Shown here piece after piece: positions 6,201 to 63,429 of a DNA stretch of 64,000 bases. The position numbers and the translations under genes were made by a program. A model generated the notes under the pieces. That model saw only the letters and a list, made by a program, of their open reading frames with translations. It was not told the DNA's origin and searched no databases. Position 1 is the first letter of the stretch; each line of letters starts with the position of its first letter. The DNA is from Podarcis gaigeae (lineage: Eukaryota), in NCBI GenBank assembly GCA_964106915.2, contig OZ066916.1, one strand, 5' to 3'.

Positions 6201-9200
6201 CTAGAAGGGAGTTTGGACCAAAATACCCTTGCCATTACTGCATGCTTGTTGATACAGAAAGAAGATTAGCTAAACTATTCACCTTCCAATCCTCGTTGCA
6301 CTGGTGTGCCACTGACACACCAGCGATTGATTCCACTCAAACGGAGAGCCATTTCTGCAGCCTAATAAAATATTATAGAAAATATAATTAAAGCCCATGA
6401 CTACTAGGAACAACCTCATGCTTAGCCCAAAAATAATAAGCAATACTAAGGGTCCACCTGCCACCACGCTTTCTAAATGTACTTCCTACATGACTTGAAG
6501 GGCAAGGATGAATACCAGAATGGTAAGTGAAGACTAACTGCTTTAGGAAATTGACGAGATGGTAGTTTCCCACCTTTCTATTTCATCCCCCTATAGAGAC
6601 CAACCAGTAGAAAGAGTCCTAGTGAAAAATGCTCAGCTGGAATATCCCAACAATCTGCACAGTCCACACTACTATAGCTCAGTTTTGTGAACAGGGAAGG
6701 GGTGAAATAGGCTGAACATTTGAGCAATGTAAACAGAAGTATTGAGACAGCATTCCATTTCTATTTTCCTACTCAGGTGAGTTCCTGGCCTGCCATCATT
6801 ACTGCATCTTGCCATCAGAACAAAGCCCCTTATATTCACAGACACGGTGTGAATACTTTTCCATAGCTTCTCGTTTCTTCAAACCGTAACACTTTTACAC
6901 AAATATGCAATGTCATCCACCAAGAAATTCCTTTACTGGAGGTGAGCAGGTACTCACAGCAGTACCGCTTTGCAAATAGCTGAAATGGTCCTGCTTAATA
7001 TTTCTTAATGTCAATAAAGACCGTTTTACAGCTTCTAGACCCAAGGGCAGACCCTCTGCCTGTTTAGATAGGCACTGAAACAGACTAACATCTTGCTTTC
7101 AACTATCAAGCAGTGTAATATACATGATGACCTAGTTCTTTAAACTGTCAGAATACATTGTGTTAAGAGATTAAATAATAAAAAAGTACTAAGCTTCATA
7201 GCAAGTCAAACCTCTGGCAGATAAAACATTTAGTAACACCTCCAAGGGAAACTATATTAGTCACTTCAGAAGAATAAATGTCAAGGTCAAATTTATATGC
7301 CCGCGTGTTAAAAGGGTATACAAGTAGGCTTTTTCATTTGCTTTTATGTTGTACATGTTCAAGAGGGTCATACCCAAGCAATGTTCATTCTCACCTTTGC
7401 AGTGGTGCATTCAACCATCTGTGCTTCATCCAGGCAAATTCTCCACCACTCCACAGCTACCAAGGGACTTGGGATAGCCATATAACGCTTCTGGTTCCTG
7501 AAACGGCGTCCATCTTCACTATTACTATGAGGAATGTCCACATAGTTCAGTTCACTACGAAGGACATCATATGTGGTGATCACTACTTCCTGCTCTGCCA
7601 AGATGTGAGGCTGCAAGAAACCATGCTTCTTCACTCCTTGATAAACCTGCATAAATTTGGGCACAATGTACATGAGAGAAAGCATTGACAATTAAATTGA
7701 GGGAGGGGGAGAGACACACAACACTGAGAAGCTGAAAATTTCCTGCCTTGCAAGAGGATTTTAACACTATGATGACAGCTTTATTCACAGTTAAGCATGC
7801 TGTAGTTAAAAAAATGTAGGTTCTCTATAACTTGGCTCTCAAGTTTCATGACAGAAATGACTGCTAAATCAAGAACTGACTACTTTAGAAACAAAGATTT
7901 ACAAGAAATAATCTGTTTCAGAAGGTAAGAGGAAGTTCTGTGACAAAAGGAGCATTTGCATGAACAATTTTGTTGGATACAGCCCTTGATTTACATTGCC
8001 ATTTTTTTCCTTGTTGATTTTAAATCACTGATTTAAATTGTCTTAATATAAATCAATCTATCCTGCAAAAAAATATCTTAAGGATTACTACCAATATAAA
8101 AATGTACTGAAATGCTGGACATTTATTTTAACAACTACCCAGGAGTGATTTTTTTTTCATTCTACTCACTTAATAACTGCATTTGCTACACTCTACCTCA
8201 ACATAGTATACTTCCCCTATTGGTTGCTGTGAAACAACACCTTTTCTTACCAACACTCGAAGAGAAGATGATCTCACGTGCCTGTTAATCTCATCAACCC
8301 ACTGGTGGCAGATAGAACTTGGAGAGATTATCAGAGTAGCTCCTGTTGGAACTGGTTTCATTGCTACAAGGCAATGGGGACAGTAAAAGGGCTTGATCTT
8401 TAGATTTTCTTCTTTGTAGTTCACACACTCAGCATGCTGCCACAGGTGGCAGTTCAGGCACTGCACACGGGCCTTATAGTCAACCAAGCCAAGCTCACCA
8501 CATATGCATTCAAAGCGATAATCAGAGGTATTGAATGGAAAAATAGAACCAGGATGTGGTACAAAAATGCTAGTGTGTTCTTGAGAGGCTGGAGGCTGCC
8601 CTTCTGAGTTGTCTTGCTGCTCTTCCGCTTCATCATCTTTTTTAGAAATGTCAGTAGAATACGTTTTGTTTTTTGAAATAGGCCTATTTTCTTGCAAGTC
8701 AGAAGTTCTATGCAGAGAATCTTCTTGCATTATCCAGCCCTTAGGATCCATTTCTGATTTTGTATTATCTTTGCTTCTTGTACAGTAATCATGCTCTTCT
8801 GCTGTGATGTCTACTGCCTGAGATAGTTTAAGACCATTTGGATAGCACGTGCCCTCATCTCCCAATTCTTTGGTTTCATTCTTATTTTCTGGTAAGTTTT
8901 TCTTCTGAACCCTAGCTGAAGTTTTTATTTTCTAAAACAAACAAACAAATAAAATAAAATAAACTTATTTTGCTTCATAAAAACACTCTGGATTAAATCA
9001 AACACTTGATTAGGAGGCACAAGGGAAGGGGAGCTGGAAAAGTCCCAATGTGCATGCTACATTCTGTGCATGTTTGGAACAAAATACACTTTCAGGATAC
9101 TGAGTAGACTTTTACAAGACTTTTTAAAGGGAGTTCCAAACAAAGGAACACACACACACACACACTTACTAGGGGTTGCCACCCCTGCTCTGTTCACCAA

Positions 9201-36679: not shown

Positions 36680-37519
<840 letters not shown>

Positions 37520-37940
37520 TAATTGCTCCTGTAGGGCATTTCAGGTATAAATCACTTTGTTGTTTCAATCCAACTTTAACCCTAAAGGATTGGCAACATT
37601 CTTCCAATTCTGAGAAACTGCTGCTATGAAGGAGTGACTTCATATCAGAAGAGAAGAGGGTCTTGATCCAACTTCAAGGTTCAAGTCGAAACCATTTAAC
37701 TCGGCTAGATGTGTACATTACTTATGATCTCTTCCTTTTGCTTTGAACTAGTCTTTCTCTTACAACCATAGACAGCTCCCCACAGAACTTTCCTGTAGTA
37801 TAATGAGCTTTGCTAAATAAGCATATATAATAGATATATTTTGGCTCTCATCTCATTAATTTTAGCTCTCAGACCATTAATTATCAATGATTTTAGAAAA
37901 GATAAGAGAGCTGTACTGTACCTATACATTGCTTAGGGTG

Positions 37941-46807: not shown

Positions 46808-49177
46808 CTGGGAATGTCTCCAGTCTGCAACTCTGGAGAGCTGTTGCCAAACATTGTAGACCATCCTGGGATGAATGGACCATTTGTTCTTGTGCTATGT
46901 CTGCAGGACCTTTATGCATGACCAACATAGGAGGGTAAAAAGTGGGCAGACTGTGGTTGTGATAAGGGAAATATCAGGAGGAACCTTATGCTCACTCAAG
47001 ACTCATTCATTCCCCATGATGTCTATGAAAGAGTTGATGAAATTTAAAACACTGTGATTGTAATGAACAGTCCCAGCTGACTATTCTCCACCTGTTCCCT
47101 CCCTGTCCTCCCTGCTGCAATGGAGGCTGGAATTCACAACACACCTCCAGGGGCATTTAAGACTGAGCCAGGAAACTATAATTTCACATGGGCATGTGGC
47201 ACCATGTCTTCTTGTCCCTAGCATGCAGATTGCACAAGTGGGAACATGGTGTGTGGTGCACCTGTCAAAGGCTACAAACAGCAGCATCTGACAGCAAAGT
47301 AGCTCATGTGATGAGCTATCAGAACTGCAGCTTGGCCATGGAGTAGTCTCAGCCTCTGGCCTGCCAGCTCCTCCCTGAGGCCTGCCATCTTGGCTGCGAG
47401 TCCTGGGAGACCTGCTCCCTGCCTTTTCCACCTGACCTGGGAGGGTGGGGCACTGAAGGACTCCAGCTACAAAAGCTGAGACTGATGAACAGACTCTTAG
47501 ACTGCATTGGGGCATTGTTTAGGGGGTTTTGTTGGGGGGGAGGGTTTGTTGCTGTTATTGATACTAATTTGCTGCATCTTTATTTCAGTACTTACTATGA
47601 GTTGTGTGGAGTTGTTTAATTTGGTTGTGTACTTTTTGATGTTTATCTATTGTTTATAACTACTTTTGTTATGTTCATAATTATGGATTTTTTTATATTG
47701 TAAAGCCTCCTTGAGCATGGCTTGAACTATAGGAAGGTGGCGTGCAAATAAAATGATGTATGTATGTATGCTCCTGGAAAGTGATGGCTATAAAAGGCTT
47801 CCTGACTGGACTGGGCAATGAAGTCCATTTACCTGAGCAACAAGGTCTGGTTCTAATGCATTCCTGTTCTGACTGCCAGTTCAGTACACTACAAAGACTT
47901 GCATCATGAGCCTGCCTTTTGGCTTTCTTAGAAGGTTGCTCTAGAGAATGGGAGGTTGGGGGTTCTGCCTCTTTCTGGTCTGTGTCACTTTTGTCATAAG
48001 TCCATTCTCTCTCATTTGTGCACTGATCCACAATTATTGTTTTTTAAAAAAAGTAAAATCAGCAAAAAAGGGCATTTCAATATGTAGCCTTGAATGTATT
48101 TTCTCACAAAATAGACAGTGCTAAATGCACAGTATCTCAAACTGCTCTGATGTGCCTTTTGAATTAGGAGCCGCACACAAGAGAAATGTGAAATCCAAAG
48201 AACAGAGATGTTCTGTTGAGCAGATTAGCCTGGAAGGTTAGTGTGGATCAGGTCAAGTTGTATCTGAATTCACAAAGAAGTAATTCCTCAATTTCTCCTA
48301 ATAGCAGCAGTTGCTTTCTCTTCCCCACTGTGCCATGGTGGTCATCATGGGCTTGTGTGGTCATTCCTTCTTCCTAATTGCCTAGCTCTGGTTTGGTTTG
48401 TGTCTGTAACAGAGAAGGGAGGGTGTGCTGTGTAGGGTAGCAGCACTAGATATCCATTGATATGAGGTGACATTGTTGGCAAGTGAGGTCATGATTGATG
48501 CATGCCGATGATGTTTCCAGGGATGCTGTGCTAGTGGCTGTCAGTATTGCTCTAATTTCATTGCTGTGCTTCCTGCTGGTTGAGCACAGGATTGCATTAT
48601 ACTACAATTAGGATCTGGCATAGCACAACCTACTTTAACTAGACCATGGGATTGCCCTGGTCCATGGTATTTAGTAGCTGATGTGTGCCAGACACTGTAT
48701 GGAGCACAGAAGTGACAGGCCTTCTCCAGATGATGAAAGATTCACATGAGGCAGAGAAAACAGGGAAGCGGGAAGAGGTCGGGTTTCAGGTCAGAAGTCA
48801 GTTATGAGGGAAAAGGCTAAATTGTACAGAAATGGGAGCTGGAAGGAACAAAGGGAGTTGACATAAAGTGAGCATGTGCAATAGTAGGACTAAGGGAAAA
48901 AATCACTGAAATGGAAATTTACATCCAAGAAGCTTGCATTTGGTTTCACTGCCTTCCACTTATAAAGAATTAATCAGTCCGAACTCCTCCAAAATGGGTC
49001 AACTGTGCTTCTGGTGCTCTGGTCTACACTTAAGAAGGCAGATCTTAATATTTTTTGGTTTAAATTGTGAAATCACCGGATGATGGATTTCTGTTGCCAG
49101 AAGGAGAACATTTATAAATAAAACAAAAAAATATATGCTTCCAGTAGCACCTTAAAGACCAACTAAGTTAGTTCTTG

Positions 49178-49215
49178 GTATGAGCTTTCGTGTGCATGCA
49201 CACTTCTTCAGATAC
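49178..49215 (-). ncRNA. Minimal type I hammerhead ribozyme motif
   Basis: Identical 38-mer to 62666-62703. Confidence 0.85.
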
Positions 49216-49363
49216 ACTGGTTAATGGACTTCCATTTCATGCGGCTCAATGTGGTGCCTTCCATAGTTCCAGTTACAGATAGGTAGCCGTGTTGGTCTGC
49301 CATAGTCAAAACAAAAAAAATTGCTTCCAGTAGCACCTTAAAGACCAACTAAGTTAGTTCTTG

Positions 49364-49401
49364 GTATGAGCTTTCGTGTGCATGCACACTTCTTCAGATA
49401 C
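49364..49401 (-). ncRNA. Minimal type I hammerhead ribozyme motif
   Basis: Identical 38-mer; 186 nt from the 49178 copy. Confidence 0.85.
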
Positions 49402-51081
49402 ACTGGTGGCAGACCAACACGGCTACCTATCTGTAACTGGATTTATAAATAATGTAGCCTTCATGGCTCTCAAAGTCACCATTCCAGGATTTTTGAGACT
49501 CTGGAAAGTGTGATCCTAAGCAGGTCTACTCAGAAGTAAGCCCCACTACATTCCATGTGGCTTACTCCCAGCTAACTGCAAGCTAAGTGAATGAATATTG
49601 TTGCTAACCAACTGCTGCCTGGCAGGCCATGTGGAAAGAGCTAGAGCTCTGTGTGAGTTTTTAAGGCAGCTGGCATTCACATCTTGGAATCCACTGTCAT
49701 AGATGGCATTAATTAAAACCACTACTGTGAGGCTCCGCAGAAAGGCTCCCTGACTGACTGCCCATGGAGACTGAAAGGGGGAACTGCCTTACCCCTGCAG
49801 GTGACAGAACTGGTATGCACACCAGGAGGAAATCAGTGATCTCCCCCCCTTAAATGTGAAGAAAACTTTTCCTAAGCTGATGGAAAAAACAAACATTTTA
49901 TGGCAAGGCGGCTTACTTTCCCTCTCTCTCTCAGATCAATTCAGAACAATTAAAATAACATAAACATAGATTGAGGTTGAAATCCTAACTCCATTTCCCT
50001 AGGATTTACCCCTGTAAATTCAATAGCATTCTGAGCAGACTTGTTTAGGATTGCAGTGTAATGTGTTAAAAGTTGTTTAATTGTACACCATCTATAAATA
50101 AGTGTTGATGATAAAAAACTGTATTTTTTCTACCCAATTTTTCTTAAAAATGCTCATGGTGGCTGTCTGCTGTGTTTGGATCTTTCCTTCCCATTAAAGT
50201 GGCCATGTACTCTACAGAGGACAGCCTGATTTTAAAGGTGATCTTTATTTAAAGGATTGTACATGCTTAGTTTAAAGATCAAGAACGATGATAAAGCAGA
50301 GCAGGACTCTTCTCCTGGATAGCAGACTGAGCACCCCACACACAGACCCCAGACCCATCACATGCCATGCTGAGTTACCCTTCCTGAATAGAATAGCCCA
50401 CATCAGGGACTCTTCTCTCTTTTCATAAAGATATTCACATATCAAAAAAAGATAGCCTGTATTTCTCGTGGTTGCATAAAGGTCTGCAATCTATTAGTAG
50501 ACAGATGCACAGACCATTTTTTTGCAATTAAAAAAGTTCCCTAATGAAAGCCACACCTTACACATGCCCTGAAGTGTTTTTTCCTAAATTTTATTGCATA
50601 TTTGAACATTTTCACGCTTCTCGCACAGTGCTAATTAACACATTGATTGAGTCCCACGTATAGTGTTTTCTAACTAGAATATGCATATGACTTCTCTTTT
50701 AGCAGAAACATGTCTTTTGGTGTTCAGCTATCACAATGGAGCACAAGGTAACGTCAGACACACTTTGGGGAGGGTCATGGCTCATTGGTAGAGCCCATGC
50801 TTGGCAGTTTTGTCAGTACTGAGAGCTTAAAGCAGCTCTCTATGATCTTTCTCAAAGCACCTTTGGAGAACAGTGAAAGCTATGCTGTTGAAATGGCGAG
50901 TACCACTTGTCTTGAAAATAACAGGTTATTTCCTATCATTCAGAAAGCTTCAATCCACATTCAGGTCTGATAGTTTCCTCCATTCTTGTGTTCAGCACAT
51001 TCACCATGGGCCATTTTCCAGCCTTTCTATACTTGAGTGAGGTTTCCTTCTCATTAAGAAGCAACAGTTCATACATTTGCC

Positions 51082-60818: not shown

Positions 60819-62665
60819 TATTCAGTCAGGCTAATTGTTGGTCTAGCTCAGTACTGCCCTACCTGACTGGGTGCAGCTCTCCATGATTTCAGACAGGGGA
60901 TTTTCCCAGCCCTTCCTGGAGATGCAAAGAGTTGACCTGGGATGTTTTGTGTGCAAAACAAACACTCTACAACTGAGCCGCAATCCTTCCCCTGTTAGCA
61001 CCCCTCTCCATGGTGCTACAACAACTCTCCATTGTGGCTATGCAGATGAACCGTCTCCCAAGCACCTGGGTGCAAACACATGTGACTTCCTCTTACCCAC
61101 CCAGCTTGAGAGTATCCTTGATATATTAATAAAGCCACTGCACTGTGACAAGAAAAGCGAGTCGTCTCAAGACTCGCACACTTTACATTACAAAGGCGCC
61201 TCCAAATTTGTCCATTTAAAAATAAATAAAATTGGTTTAGAAAAATGTTAAACCATTTAGTCAAAGCACCTCTAAGCATGGTACACAATATAATATAAAA
61301 TAGTACTACACATGAAAATCAGAAAAAGTTTTCAACAAGTATTTGAAAATAGTGAACATTTTTACCGACTGCTCCGATAGGTACCCTACTGTGATGCTAT
61401 TTTTTTGTTTTCCCAATAATAATTTATAATAATAATTTATTATTTATACCCCACCCATGTGGCTGGGTTCCCCCAGCCACTCCCAAAGCTACCCCCCCCC
61501 AAAAAAAATTGGCCCTTGCAATCTGGCTATCCCTACTTTTTTATACTTTGGTGACACCCACTTTCTTACTTTGGTCATGCCTACTTTTACACTTCAGACA
61601 CATCCACAATTATACATCATCTCTGGAGGGATAATCATGAGTCAACGTGGCCCTCAACCCCAAAAATGTTAGCTACCCCTGCTTTACAAGCTTGTTTCAG
61701 TTTGAGCTTGAGGTGGAATTTCATTTAATGCAAGCCATTTTGTTCCTTTCTAGCCTTTATGTTAATATTGGTAAGGTTGGGTTCTTTGCTTCTAATATAT
61801 CAGACATAATACATTCCCTGGTGGTGCATTTTTTTCACATTTACCATGCAATCCTATGCATGTCTACTCAGAAGTCTTCCCACTGAATTCAACAGGACGT
61901 ACTCCCAAGTAAATATACAGAAGTTTGCAGCCCTTTAAAGATTAATAGGCTACTGTTATCAGCTGTTTGAGGCTATTTTTCAAAGAACCAATCCAGCTTC
62001 TACATAGACCCTGAATTTCAAAGACATTTAATTTTATCTGAAGAGTGTGCCTGATTCTATCCCATCTGTACAGCAGACTGGGAACTCAGCCAAGAAGCAT
62101 GAGCTATCCTGCACTTTCTGAACTGTATGTTATGAATGCAAGAGAGCTTGCAGAGAAACCCATAAACAGAGTTGTTCCAGCATTTATTAGTATATGCAGA
62201 ACATTTTCCTGTCCAGGAGAAACAAATGTTGTTCAGAATGGAAAATCAGACTAAACATAGACATGACAGCATGCCAGATCAGCCAGTTTACTGAGCAATC
62301 AGGTAAGGTGTGAGTAATTCTGGAAATGCGTTATATATTGCATGGAGATGTCCTTCTGTCATTCTTTCTAATGTAGCACTTGGTAGTCATGTGCCTGTTA
62401 AATGGACAGTGAAACAGAGCCACTCCAAGACAAGGCGGTGGTTTCCAAATACTTAGAAAAGTATGCCAAAAAAAATAGTTCTTTTAAGTTCTTTAAGGTA
62501 AGGGGAGGAACCAAATCAGTCAATGAGGGCTGAGTATGCTCACTATGCTTCAGGGAACACATTATGACGAGCAGTTACAGATAGGTAGCCGTGTTGGTCT
62601 GCCATAGTCAAAACAAAAAAAATTCCTTCCAGTAGCACCTTAAAGACCAACTAAGTTAGTTCTTG

Positions 62666-62703
62666 GTATGAGCTTTCGTGTGCATGCACACTTCTTCAGA
62701 TAC
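62666..62703 (-). ncRNA. Minimal type I hammerhead ribozyme motif
   Basis: Exact reverse complement of 63256-63293. Confidence 0.85.
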
Positions 62704-62883
62704 ACTGAAACAGAAGTTACCAGACCCTTCTATATAGTGAGAAGGTGGGGAGGGGTATTACTCAGAAGGGTGGTGGGAATGGGTGATTGGCAGATAGCTG
62801 TGATGAGCCTGTTGACGACTCTTAACGACTGCAATAGGTCTTACAGGAAAAAGCAAGGGGTGAGAAGGTGAAAAATGGCTTTG

Positions 62884-63018
62884 TCATGTATAATGAGATA
62901 AGAATCCAATGTCTTTGTTCAGACCAGGTCTCTCCATGGTTTTAAGTTTGGTAATAAGTTGCAATTCAGCAGCTTCTCTTTCCAGTCTATTTCTGAAATT
63001 CCTTTGTAGTAAAACAGC
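62884..63018 (-). pseudogene. C-terminal 44 aa of a PLE GIY-YIG endonuclease (AVLLQRNFRNRLEREAAELQLITKLKTMERPGLNKDIGFLSHYT*)
   Basis: Manual translation; R-x3-E...I...GLN pattern typical of the C-terminal part of Penelope GIY-YIG domains; stop codon at 62884-62886. Confidence 0.8.
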
Positions 63019-63168
63019 TACATGGAGAGACCTGGTCTGAACAAAGACATTGGATTCTTATCTCATTATACATGACAAAGCCATTTTTCACCTTCTCACC
63101 CCTTGCTTTTTCCTGTAAGACCTATTGCAGTCGTTAAGAGTCGTCAACAGGCTCATCACAGCTATCTG

Positions 63169-63255
63169 CCAATCACCCATTCCCACCACCCTTCTGAGTA
63201 ATACCCCTCCCCACCTTCTCACTATATAGAAGGGTCTGGTAACTTCTGTTTCAGT
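63169..63255 (+). promoter_or_regulatory. PLE pLTR Pol II promoter (CCAAT, TATA-like box, Inr); mirror copy on the minus strand at 62704-62790
   Basis: CCAAT 63169-63173; TATATAGA 63223-63230; Inr-like TCAGT 63251-63255 with its A exactly 30 nt after the TATA start. Confidence 0.65.
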
Positions 63256-63293
63256 GTATCTGAAGAAGTGTGCATGCACACGAAAGCTCATAC
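63256..63293 (+). ncRNA. Minimal type I hammerhead ribozyme motif (sense to GRM1)
   Basis: GUAU-CUGAAGA-A-GUGUG(CAUG)CACAC-GAAA-GC-UC/AUAC: stem I GUAU/AUAC, core CUGANGA and GAAA, palindromic AGCU in place of stem III, predicted cleavage after C63289. Confidence 0.85.
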
Positions 63294-63429
63294 CAAGAAC
63301 TAACTTAGTTGGTCTTTAAGGTGCTACTGGAAGGAATTTTTTTTTGTTTTGATTATGATGAGCCTTAGCCAGTATGATGAAAGGGAGGAAGAAAAAGAGG
63401 GTATGGAAATTTGACTTTGATTGAACCAG

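What the first reader, a model, noticed from the sequence alone, without database searches (positions are those of the whole stretch)
49110..49452. TSD-flanked, non-coding tandem-hammerhead element: a candidate lizard retrozyme
Seen: a 319-bp insertion between perfect 12-bp TSDs (ATTTATAAATAA) carries two identical minus-strand motifs GUAU-CUGAAGA-AGUGUGCAUGCACAC-GAAA-GCUC-AUAC, 186 nt apart, and no ORF. Established: minimal type I hammerheads of Penelope-like elements lack a stable stem III and are proposed to cleave as dimers through a palindrome; non-LTR retrozymes are tandem hammerhead repeats that give small circular RNAs. Inference: the two AGCU palindromes can pair within one transcript to form a double hammerhead, cutting at 49368/49367 and 49182/49181 and releasing a 186-nt monomer that could circularise. 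The element would be mobilised in trans by the PLE family seen at 62.6 kb.
Basis: partly seen in the sequence, partly recalled or inferred. Interest (0 to 1): 0.9.

Follow-up and report, generated by a model that had tools for sequence, protein, structure and literature searches.

The report
Mini Penelope retroelement with two hammerheads
This is a real and very recent 319-bp insertion of a cut-down, non-coding Penelope-like retroelement that carries two copies of a minimal self-cutting RNA motif; the kind is already described, and nothing here shows that it cuts itself or forms an RNA circle.

Summary
A 319-bp insert (49122-49440) lies between perfect 12-bp repeats. It carries two identical minus-strand minimal type-I hammerhead motifs 186 nt apart and has no ORF longer than 34 codons.

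A related organism has a contig that joins 49109 directly to 49441 with one copy of the 12-mer. That is the empty site, so this is a true, young insertion (flanks differ by less than 1%).

The layout is the standard Penelope-like element (PLE) insertion in miniature: an inverted 34-nt "tail", a partial tandem, and a 3' end at an internal reverse-transcription start site. The 186-nt unit looks like an internally deleted PLE: hammerhead, 84 nt, 37-nt tail and 48 nt of the probable ORF start. Its deletion joint recurs in other contigs. This scan had already noted two similar tandem elements elsewhere in this genome (s1-656169, s1-686384).

It fits the broad 2026 view of animal retrozymes as non-autonomous PLE derivatives. 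It does not fit the 2020 definition, which needs canonical hammerheads and shown circRNAs.

Predicted folds bury the CUGA box. Published PLE hammerheads cleave poorly or need protein. No circle evidence could be obtained.

It is a new member of a known kind, of modest interest.

The parts
49110..49121 (.). Left target-site duplication, ATTTATAAATAA
   Evidence: Exact 12-mer. Organism D's empty site holds a single copy.
49122..49220 (-). Unit 2. It starts at CCAGTG, carries hammerhead 2 and the downstream module, and ends in ...TTTTTTTGTT. That end lies at or near the first internal RT start site (site 1). The last 2 nt are ambiguous with the TSD.
   Evidence: The 63.3-kb copy ends 2-4 nt further on, at GTTTTG(A).
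49178..49215 (-). Hammerhead 2: helix I GUAU/AUAC, CUGAAGA box, bulged A, helix II GUGUG-CAUG-CACAC, then GAA-AGCU-C17. The predicted cut is at 49182/49181.
   Evidence: The features match the min-HHR description in PMC4209133.
49221..49268 (-). 48-nt spacer. It is probably the start of the PLE ORF, in frame with an ATG at the start of the tail. It is joined to unit 2 by an internal-deletion joint, AAC(C)|AGTG.
   Evidence: Frame 2. A loose end at 49219 in X6 shows other copies continuing in an open frame. Summed contig depth here is 40-550 times lower than over the hammerhead, but still 160-990 times the flanks.
49269..49305 (-). 37-nt PLE 'tail', the stretch between the two RT start sites
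   Evidence: It is present in the 62.6-kb minus copy and absent from the 63.3-kb and unit 2 ends. Many family copies end at 49271 or 49263 next to AT-rich unrelated DNA. An optional 30-40 bp tail is described in PMC11167929 and PMC8557442.
49306..49406 (-). Unit 1: CCAGTG, hammerhead 1, then 84 nt down to GTTTTGA
49364..49401 (-). Hammerhead 1, identical to hammerhead 2. The predicted cut is at 49368/49367.
49407..49440 (-). 34-nt inverted copy of the tail at the 5' end of the insert. With 49269-49302 it forms a 34-bp perfect stem (about -69 kcal/mol) that encloses hammerhead 1.
49441..49452 (.). Right target-site duplication
62572..63357 (.). Context: a second insertion of the same PLE family. 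It is a fold-back of two 5'-truncated 3' ends (arms of 329 nt, 99% complementary), each with the same hammerhead. One outer end carries the tail and the other stops at site 1. There is no RT, and the flanks read ATTATGA(C/T)GAG.

Best explanation
The element is a young insertion of a non-autonomous, internally deleted Penelope-like element (a 'mini-PLE'). It was made by the PLE reverse transcriptase/GIY-YIG endonuclease acting in trans.

The 186-nt unit consists of the complete minimal hammerhead, 84 nt down to the first RT start site, the 37-nt tail down to the second start site, and 48 nt of the probable ORF start. Everything between the ORF start and the hammerhead has been deleted.

The insertion most likely arose by target-primed reverse transcription at an AT-only site. 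One DNA end primed at site 1 of a more-than-unit-length RNA and copied about 285 nt: unit 2, spacer, tail and unit 1. The other DNA end primed at site 2 and copied only the 34-nt tail, which therefore sits inverted at the 5' end. A 12-bp duplication results.

Shown here: the insertion, the TSD, the empty site, the anatomy, family membership and family abundance. Inferred: dual-end priming, the spacer being the ORF start, and the unit being the minimal RNA that the RT needs.

The hammerheads are inherited PLE parts. Whether they cut in this RNA is unknown, and cutting is probably inefficient without protein.
For: There is a precise empty site in organism D, and the site appears filled in A and B (contigs run 23-43 nt into the insert from each flank); the flanks differ by less than 1%.

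All four hammerhead modules in the window are identical over 82 nt.

Two alternative 3' ends lie 35-37 nt apart. They are seen in this window and as recurrent ends across the family (loose ends at 49263 and 49271). This matches the two RT start sites that flank the optional 30-40 bp tail in PAc (PMC11167929).

Both insertions in the window have one end at site 1 and the other end with an inverted tail-bearing copy. PAc cleaves and extends both DNA strands.

Both targets are AT-rich and begin with ATT, the preferred PAc cleavage motif.

Partial tandems, an inverted 5' piece and a tail are the textbook PLE insertion layout (PMC8557442).

The distance from the start of stem II to the end of the spacer is 169 nt. 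The PAc minimal template needs the first 172 nt counted from the same landmark.

Short contigs that differ from this locus, or come from organisms without it, cross the spacer/unit-2 joint: X1 record 5, X6 record 28 and X17 record 12.

No variant reaching 10% was listed inside the hammerhead apart from C17 to U, which is still a cleavable H17. The next 15 nt have three such sites.
Against: No RT or endonuclease ORF of this family is in the window, and Pfam finds nothing in the 46-aa ORF remnant at 62.9 kb. PLE identity therefore rests on the hammerhead type, the architecture and the literature.

The bridging contigs have only 24-30 nt on the hammerhead side of the joint, just under the tool's 31-nt rule.

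Reading the spacer as the ORF start rests on an in-frame ATG and on one 30-nt loose-end consensus built from 3 contigs.

The match to the PAc minimal template is an analogy between different PLE families.

A more-than-unit template is needed, and its source is unknown. It could be a tandem array or an RNA circle.
Confidence: 0.72

Rival explanations
1. It is a genuine retrozyme. Minus-strand transcripts fold into a double hammerhead through the two AGCU palindromes and release a 186-nt monomer. The monomer is ligated into a circle, and the circle serves as a rolling-circle template for the PLE RT. That would explain more-than-unit-length insertions.
For: Two complete cores lie in tandem, each with a palindromic 15.1-16.1 AGCU. 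The 186-nt period recurs. An internally initiating RT loses the 3' module at each round, so dimers need longer-than-dimer templates, which a circle would supply. Unit 1 is preceded by a C that matches the mini-element joint rather than the full-length PLE, which has T there. The circle model was proposed for PLEs in PMC4209133. The 2026 preprint finds retrozyme-like tandems in 4 of 5 reptiles, with a mean consensus of 176 bp.
Against: The hammerheads are minimal, without helix III or loop-loop contacts. Such motifs cleave poorly in vitro even as dimers. The PAc hammerhead cleaves only with protein, no RNA-seq reads end at its cleavage site, and ribozyme mutants still insert in vitro. The predicted ensemble pairs the CUGA box, helix I probability is about 0, the active fold costs +6.7 kcal per unit and the AGCU duplex gives back only -2.5 to -3.9. 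A -69 kcal/mol stem encloses hammerhead 1. The circle fold has z = +0.2. The fixed 5' start at CCAGTG here, apparently shared by the 284-bp copy noted earlier, suggests a linear RNA with a defined end. The ribozyme strand is antisense to GRM1. An earlier follow-up on a sister copy reported no sign of a circle (unchecked).
Confidence: 0.13
2. It is a one-off rearrangement. A full-length PLE RNA was copied, and the RT switched template twice during this single insertion event. That created the spacer/hammerhead joint and the tandem by accident, so there is no heritable 186-nt family.
For: PLE insertions are notoriously rearranged, with tandem and inverted pieces. The joint has only 1 nt of microhomology. 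Tandem Repeats Finder does not see a tandem array.
Against: Contigs from organism D, which lacks this insertion, from organism G, and a non-identical contig from organism A all cross the same joint. Two other loci in this genome were noted with 186- and 181-nt spacing. Both units start at the same CCAGTG.
Confidence: 0.1
3. It is an assembly artefact or a chance resemblance.
For: Repeats of this family are hard to assemble. Rfam reports no hammerhead here.
Against: Independent runs of two organisms have contigs that enter the insert from both flanks, and a third shows the exact empty site. Four identical 30-mers are found where 0 are expected. The Rfam models require helix III, which this class lacks by definition.
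Confidence: 0.02

Closest known systems
Minimal type-I hammerheads (min-HHR) in the pseudo-LTRs of metazoan Penelope-like elements (Cervera & de la Pena 2014, PMC4209133)
   Same: CUGANGA and GAAA boxes, one extra nucleotide between A9 and G10.1, a G10.1-C11.1 pair, a 4-bp helix I, a helix II longer than the canonical 4 bp, and a palindromic AGCU in place of helix III/loop 3. The motif occurs in tandem and in back-to-back pairs, and the family is very abundant. The same paper reports such motifs in turtle and snakes.
   Different: This particular sequence family was not found in the papers I could read. Here the motif sits in a 186-nt non-coding unit and not next to a full ORF.
PLE insertion architecture and internal RT initiation (Craig et al. 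2021, PMC8557442; Frangieh et al. 2024, PMC11167929, Poseidon_Ac of Anolis carolinensis)
   Same: A partial tandem forms a pseudo-LTR. There is an inverted 5' piece and an optional 30-40 bp tail bounded by two RT start sites. The target is AT-rich with ATT. The hammerhead lies just upstream of the start sites. The distance from stem II to the end of the retained RNA is 169 nt here against 172 nt for the PAc minimal template.
   Different: It is a different PLE family: the hammerhead and tail sequences are unrelated to Poseidon_Ac. The ORF seems to start in the tail, not in stem II. The whole structure is scaled down to 319 bp and has no coding capacity.
Non-LTR retrozymes of animals (Cervera & de la Pena 2020, PMC7229834; Li, Clavereau & Pollet 2026 preprint, doi 10.64898/2026.07.22.740005)
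   Same: Small, non-coding hammerhead-bearing repeat units of 170-400 bp, with GC below 50% (42% here), TSDs longer than 4 bp, co-occurrence with PLEs, and a proposed origin as non-autonomous PLE derivatives. Reptile families average 176 bp.
   Different: The 2020 definition rests on canonical type I hammerheads with tertiary contacts, multimeric arrays and demonstrated circRNAs, and none of these is shown here. There are only 1.54 units. An inverted tail is present. The insert lies in an intron, where the preprint finds such elements depleted.

Membership tests
PLE-type minimal hammerhead (min-HHR) | Conserved core: C3-U4-G5-A6-N7-G8-A9, G12-A13-A14, A15.1/U16.1 and H17 | tested here: met
   The sequence reads CUGAAGA ... 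GAA-AGCU-C in both copies.
PLE-type minimal hammerhead (min-HHR) | [quoted passage not shown] | tested here: met
   A bulged A precedes GUGUG...CACAC. Helix II pair probability is about 0.9. The criteria come from PMC4209133.
PLE-type minimal hammerhead (min-HHR) | No stable helix III; palindromic positions 15.2-16.2 that allow a dimeric helix III | tested here: met
   AGCU has no loop. The duplex gives only -2.5 to -3.9 kcal/mol. Rfam hammerhead models give no hit.
PLE-type minimal hammerhead (min-HHR) | Self-cleavage activity | not testable with these tools
   This needs in-vitro transcription. Thermodynamic prediction disfavours the active fold.
Penelope-like element insertion (non-autonomous derivative) | Partial tandem (pseudo-LTR), optional inverted 5' piece, and a 30-40 bp tail at one end | tested here: met
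   compared with the description in PMC8557442.
Penelope-like element insertion (non-autonomous derivative) | Variable-length TSD at an AT-rich target, and a true insertion | tested here: met
   12-bp TSD made only of A and T, with an empty site in organism D.
Penelope-like element insertion (non-autonomous derivative) | Sequence continuity with an autonomous PLE encoding RT and GIY-YIG endonuclease | tested here: inconclusive
   The module is identical to the 62.6-kb copy, which follows an ORF remnant, but that remnant gives no Pfam hit. There is no RT or endonuclease in the window.
Non-LTR retrozyme (2020 definition) | Canonical type I hammerhead with helix III and loop 1-loop 2 tertiary contacts | tested here: not met
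   Minimal motif, 4-bp helix I, no helix III. The distinction is drawn in PMC7229834.
Non-LTR retrozyme (2020 definition) | Head-to-tail tandem repeats of a 170-400 bp monomer | tested here: inconclusive
   186-nt period but only 1.54 units, and Tandem Repeats Finder makes no call. Arrays elsewhere in the genome could not be searched.
Non-LTR retrozyme (2020 definition) | Accumulation of monomer-length circular RNA | not testable with these tools
   All runs laid were contigs, and no RNA run of the source organism was listed.
Non-LTR retrozyme (2026 operational definition) | A tandem repeat called by TRF with at least 2 consecutive units, each holding a complete canonical or minimal hammerhead | tested here: inconclusive
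   Two complete minimal hammerheads are present. The tool's TRF run (scores 2/5/7) gives no 186-nt array. The authors' own parameters were not run.

The most novel reading that the evidence does not exclude
The 186-nt unit is a true minimal-hammerhead retrozyme of an amniote. PLE protein helps the two weak hammerheads dimerise and cut, the monomer is circularised, and the circle is the rolling-circle template that yields more-than-unit-length insertions such as this one. That would link the internal initiation of PLE reverse transcriptase to a need for circular or multimeric templates.
Probability: 0.1. Interest if true: 0.7.

Novelty: new member of a known kind. Interest (0 to 1): 0.3.

Why it matters
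This locus is a clean natural example of a PLE-derived mini-element, with an exact empty site in a close relative. That makes it a well-dated in-vivo product of the PLE integration machinery.

Together with the fold-back insertion at 62.6 kb, it shows the signatures that Frangieh et al. 2024 saw in vitro. There are two internal RT start sites 35-37 nt apart. Each insertion has one end at site 1 and an inverted, tail-bearing copy at the other. The targets are AT-rich and begin with ATT.

The unit keeps almost exactly the RNA stretch that is the minimal template in the Anolis Poseidon system (169 nt here, 172 nt there). This suggests that natural selection on a parasite of PLEs has mapped the cis-acting module.

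The locus does not open a new category. Minimal hammerheads in PLEs, their tandem and inverted layouts, and the idea that animal retrozymes are non-autonomous PLE derivatives are all published.

Tried and rejected
- **Rfam.** The gathering search on the whole window and the E-value search on 48900-49700 gave no hammerhead. The only hit was a sub-threshold MIR1919 match (27.8 bits against 85), caused by the long inverted repeat. I reject it as spurious.
- **Tandem Repeats Finder.** It finds no 186-nt array.
- **Double-hammerhead folding.** The structure is a pseudoknot in a single strand, so the "constrained" energies from that call are invalid and I discard them. I replaced them with per-unit constrained folding and ensemble probabilities. 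The cofold in the same call pairs the two 14-nt helix II palindromes between molecules and does not pair AGCU with AGCU.
- **Collection scans.** Exact scans of metagenome and viral contigs for the 30-nt core found 0 hits.
- **Pfam.** Nothing for the 46-aa ORF remnant at 62884-63024.
- **Earlier findings.** Look-ups by place (near) and by sequence were blank.
- **Literature.** Lunse, Weinberg & Breaker 2017 is not held, so I cite it only through the review PMC6765202. I compared the Poseidon_Ac consensus by eye only. Its hammerhead and tail are a different sequence family, so PAc results apply by analogy.
- **Not attempted.** I could not verify the organism because run names are coded.
- **Coordinates.** The ruler (minus strand) reads one lower than the true coordinate. 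The coordinates in this report follow.
Full report
**Observation.** The + strand has ATTTATAAATAA at 49110-49121 and 49441-49452 and nowhere else in the window. The 319 bp between them (49122-49440) contain a 100-nt direct repeat with 186-nt spacing (49122-49221 / 49308-49407). They also contain a 40-nt, 95% inverted repeat (49263-49302 / 49407-49446). The 30-nt hammerhead core occurs without mismatch on the minus strand at 49182-49211 and 49368-49397. It occurs again at 62670-62699 (-) and 63260-63289 (+). Shuffled sequence gives 0 matches. No frame has an ORF above 34 codons.

**Is it a real insertion?** I laid contigs of four public runs on 48900-49700.
- In X6 (organism D) a single 3149-nt contig matches 48900-49109 and continues at its very next base with 49441-49700. 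That is the empty site with one copy of the 12-mer.
- In X1 (organism A, probably the source species) and X4 (organism B), contigs run from both flanks into the insert: 43 and 30 nt on the left, 23 nt on the right. No empty-site contig was listed for them.
- The flanks of A, B and D differ at only 3-4 positions in about 470-480 nt.

The insertion is therefore very recent. It may be a few million years old or less (this assumes a substitution rate), or it may still be polymorphic.

**Anatomy on the minus (RNA-sense) strand**:
- 49440-49407: a 34-nt inverted copy of the tail.
- 49406-49306: unit 1, which is CCAGTG, hammerhead 1 and 84 nt ending in GTTTTGA.
- 49305-49269: the 37-nt tail.
- 49268-49221: a 48-nt spacer.
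- 49220-49122: unit 2, which is CCAGTG and hammerhead 2, ending in ...TTTTTTTGTT against the TSD.

All four hammerhead modules in the window are identical over 82 nt, from CAGTG to GGAAG.

**The hammerhead.** The motif has every feature that Cervera and de la Pena (2014, PMC4209133) list for metazoan PLE min-HHRs:
- the two conserved boxes;
- an extra nucleotide between A9 and G10.1;
- a G10.1-C11.1 pair;
- a 4-bp helix I and a 5-bp helix II;
- a palindromic AGCU with no loop 3, so helix III can form only between two copies.

Rfam has no hit. That is expected for a class without helix III.

Across the family, no variant reaching 10% was listed inside the hammerhead except C17 to U, which is still a permitted H17. 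The following 15 nt have three such sites. This is mild evidence that the motif is conserved among subfamilies.

**What the pieces are.** The element at 62572-63357 is a fold-back of two 5'-truncated copies (arms of 329 nt, 99% complementary). It comprises an ORF remnant, about 190 nt of untranslated sequence, the hammerhead and the 84-nt module.
- Its right copy stops at GTTTTG(A).
- Its left, inverted copy runs 35 nt further, through the tail.
- The flanks read ATTATGA(C/T)GAG on both sides.

The family therefore has two alternative 3' ends, 35-37 nt apart. Across the family, many contigs break into unrelated AT-rich DNA at 49271 and 49263, which is the end of the tail.

This is the signature that Frangieh et al. 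(2024, PMC11167929) explained for Poseidon_Ac of Anolis carolinensis:
- reverse transcription starts at two internal sites that flank an optional 30-40 bp tail;
- both DNA strands are cleaved and extended;
- the endonuclease prefers AT-rich DNA with ATT.

Craig et al. (2021, PMC8557442) describe partial tandems, an inverted 5'-truncated copy and a tail at either end as the normal PLE insertion layout. The 319-bp element is that layout in miniature.

**The spacer.** It is in frame with an ATG at the start of the tail (frame 2).
- In organism D, three contigs that match the spacer continue past 49219 into a different sequence that keeps this frame open (loose end).
- Most family copies have other sequence upstream of CAGTG, the same sequence as at 62.6 kb (loose ends at 49219 and 49405).

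I therefore read the spacer as the first codons of the PLE ORF. I read the AAC(C)|AGTG joint as an internal deletion that removed nearly the whole ORF and 3' UTR. This is an inference from thin data.

Summed contig depth over the spacer is 40-550 times lower than over the hammerhead, but still 160-990 times the unique flanks. The tool warns that this measure is not a copy number.

**One-off or family?** Short contigs cross the spacer/unit-2 joint:
- in organism A, with 2 substitutions and 5 gaps, so it is not this locus;
- in organism D, which lacks this insertion;
- in organism G, from a run guessed to be RNA.

They carry 24-30 nt on the hammerhead side, just under the tool's 31-nt rule. Earlier notes of this scan report tandem minimal hammerheads 186 nt apart in a 284-bp insert (which equals this element without its inverted tail) and 181 nt apart at two other places on the same sequence. 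These notes are leads, not tests, but they agree. I take the 186-nt unit to be heritable.

**Why these boundaries?** The distances from the first base of stem II are 84 nt to site 1, 121 nt to the end of the tail, and 169 nt to the end of the spacer. In PAc the RT start sites lie up to 111-118 nt from the same landmark, and the minimal RNA template needs the first 172 nt. By analogy, the mini-element keeps just the module the RT must bind. The RT starts upstream of part of that module, so each copy loses its 3' end. Only a more-than-unit RNA can therefore give a dimer such as this one.

**Will it cut and circularise?** None of my tests supports this.
- In the nearest-neighbour ensemble of one 105-nt unit, the CUGA box is paired with a downstream stretch (P unpaired at most 0.14 for the first six bases).
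- Helix I has probability about 0.
- The hammerhead-competent fold costs +6.7 kcal/mol per unit, and the AGCU duplex returns only -2.5 to -3.9.
- In this copy the inverted tail and the tail form a 34-bp stem of about -69 kcal/mol around hammerhead 1.
- The 186-nt circle is no more structured than shuffles (z = +0.2).

Such models ignore tertiary contacts and proteins, so these results are weak evidence. The literature points the same way:
- Min-HHRs cleave poorly even as dimers.
- The PAc hammerhead cleaves only with protein.
- Ribozyme mutants insert normally in vitro, and no RNA-seq reads end at the cleavage site.
- In the 2026 preprint, 8 of 9 Xenopus dimers did not cleave.

I could not test RNA ends or circles. 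All runs were contigs, and none from organism A is on record as RNA.

**Context.** The first coding exon of GRM1 lies at 36728-37522 (+) (E = 1.7e-124 to mGluR1 structures). A SHPRH exon lies at 8170-8865 (-). No ORF of 130 aa or more downstream of 37522 matched a Pfam family. The element therefore sits in the following GRM1 intron, and its ribozyme strand is antisense to the gene. Host transcription would produce the non-ribozyme strand.

**Comparison and verdict.** The element works like, and is best filed as, a non-autonomous derivative of a Penelope-like element carrying PLE-type minimal hammerheads. It meets the broad idea of Li, Clavereau and Pollet (2026 preprint) that animal retrozymes are non-autonomous PLE sequences. 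They report such elements in 4 of 5 reptiles, with a mean consensus of 176 bp. It fails the hammerhead criterion of the 2020 definition (PMC7229834), and the circRNA criterion is untested. It is a new member of a known kind and of modest interest. Its value lies in the clean empty site and in the in-vivo footprints of dual-end, internally initiated reverse transcription.

Noticed in passing
window 62572-63357: A fold-back insertion of the same PLE family. Its arms (62610-62938 / 63021-63349) are 329 nt and 99% complementary, with 82 nt between them. It holds two hammerheads on opposite strands and is flanked by ATTATGA(C/T)GAG. One outer end carries the 35-nt tail and the other stops at GTTTTG(A). 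It has no RT.
   Followed up: partly
window 49401 and 49215 (minus strand, 4 nt 5' of CUGA): A family-wide hot spot for 5' ends. In all four runs many contigs leave the element exactly here, either into unrelated AT-rich DNA or into a head-to-head inverted hammerhead ('opposite strands' joints 49214<->49401). This is not the ribozyme cleavage site, and its cause is unexplained. It could be a transcription start, an RT stop at the folded hammerhead, or a preferred joining point.
   Followed up: no
window 36728-37522 (+) and 8170-8865 (-): The first coding exon of metabotropic glutamate receptor 1 (GRM1) and a PHD/SNF2 exon of SHPRH lie in divergent orientation. The hammerhead element lies in the GRM1 intron, antisense to the gene.
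   Followed up: partly
window 49494-49574: Another interspersed repeat lies just beside the insertion. Its summed contig depth is 8-330 times the flanks in the three DNA runs, and it is also covered in the run guessed to be RNA. I did not identify it.
   Followed up: no
window 49269-49302 with 49407-49440: If the minus strand (or the plus strand) is transcribed, the inverted tail and the tail form a perfect 34-bp RNA hairpin. This produced a spurious sub-threshold Rfam MIR1919 match. Such fold-backs could be a source of small RNAs against the PLE family. This is speculation.
   Followed up: no
output: The position ruler of get_sequence on the minus strand read one lower than the true coordinate in this call (compare). 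All coordinates in the report follow the + strand tools.
   Followed up: yes
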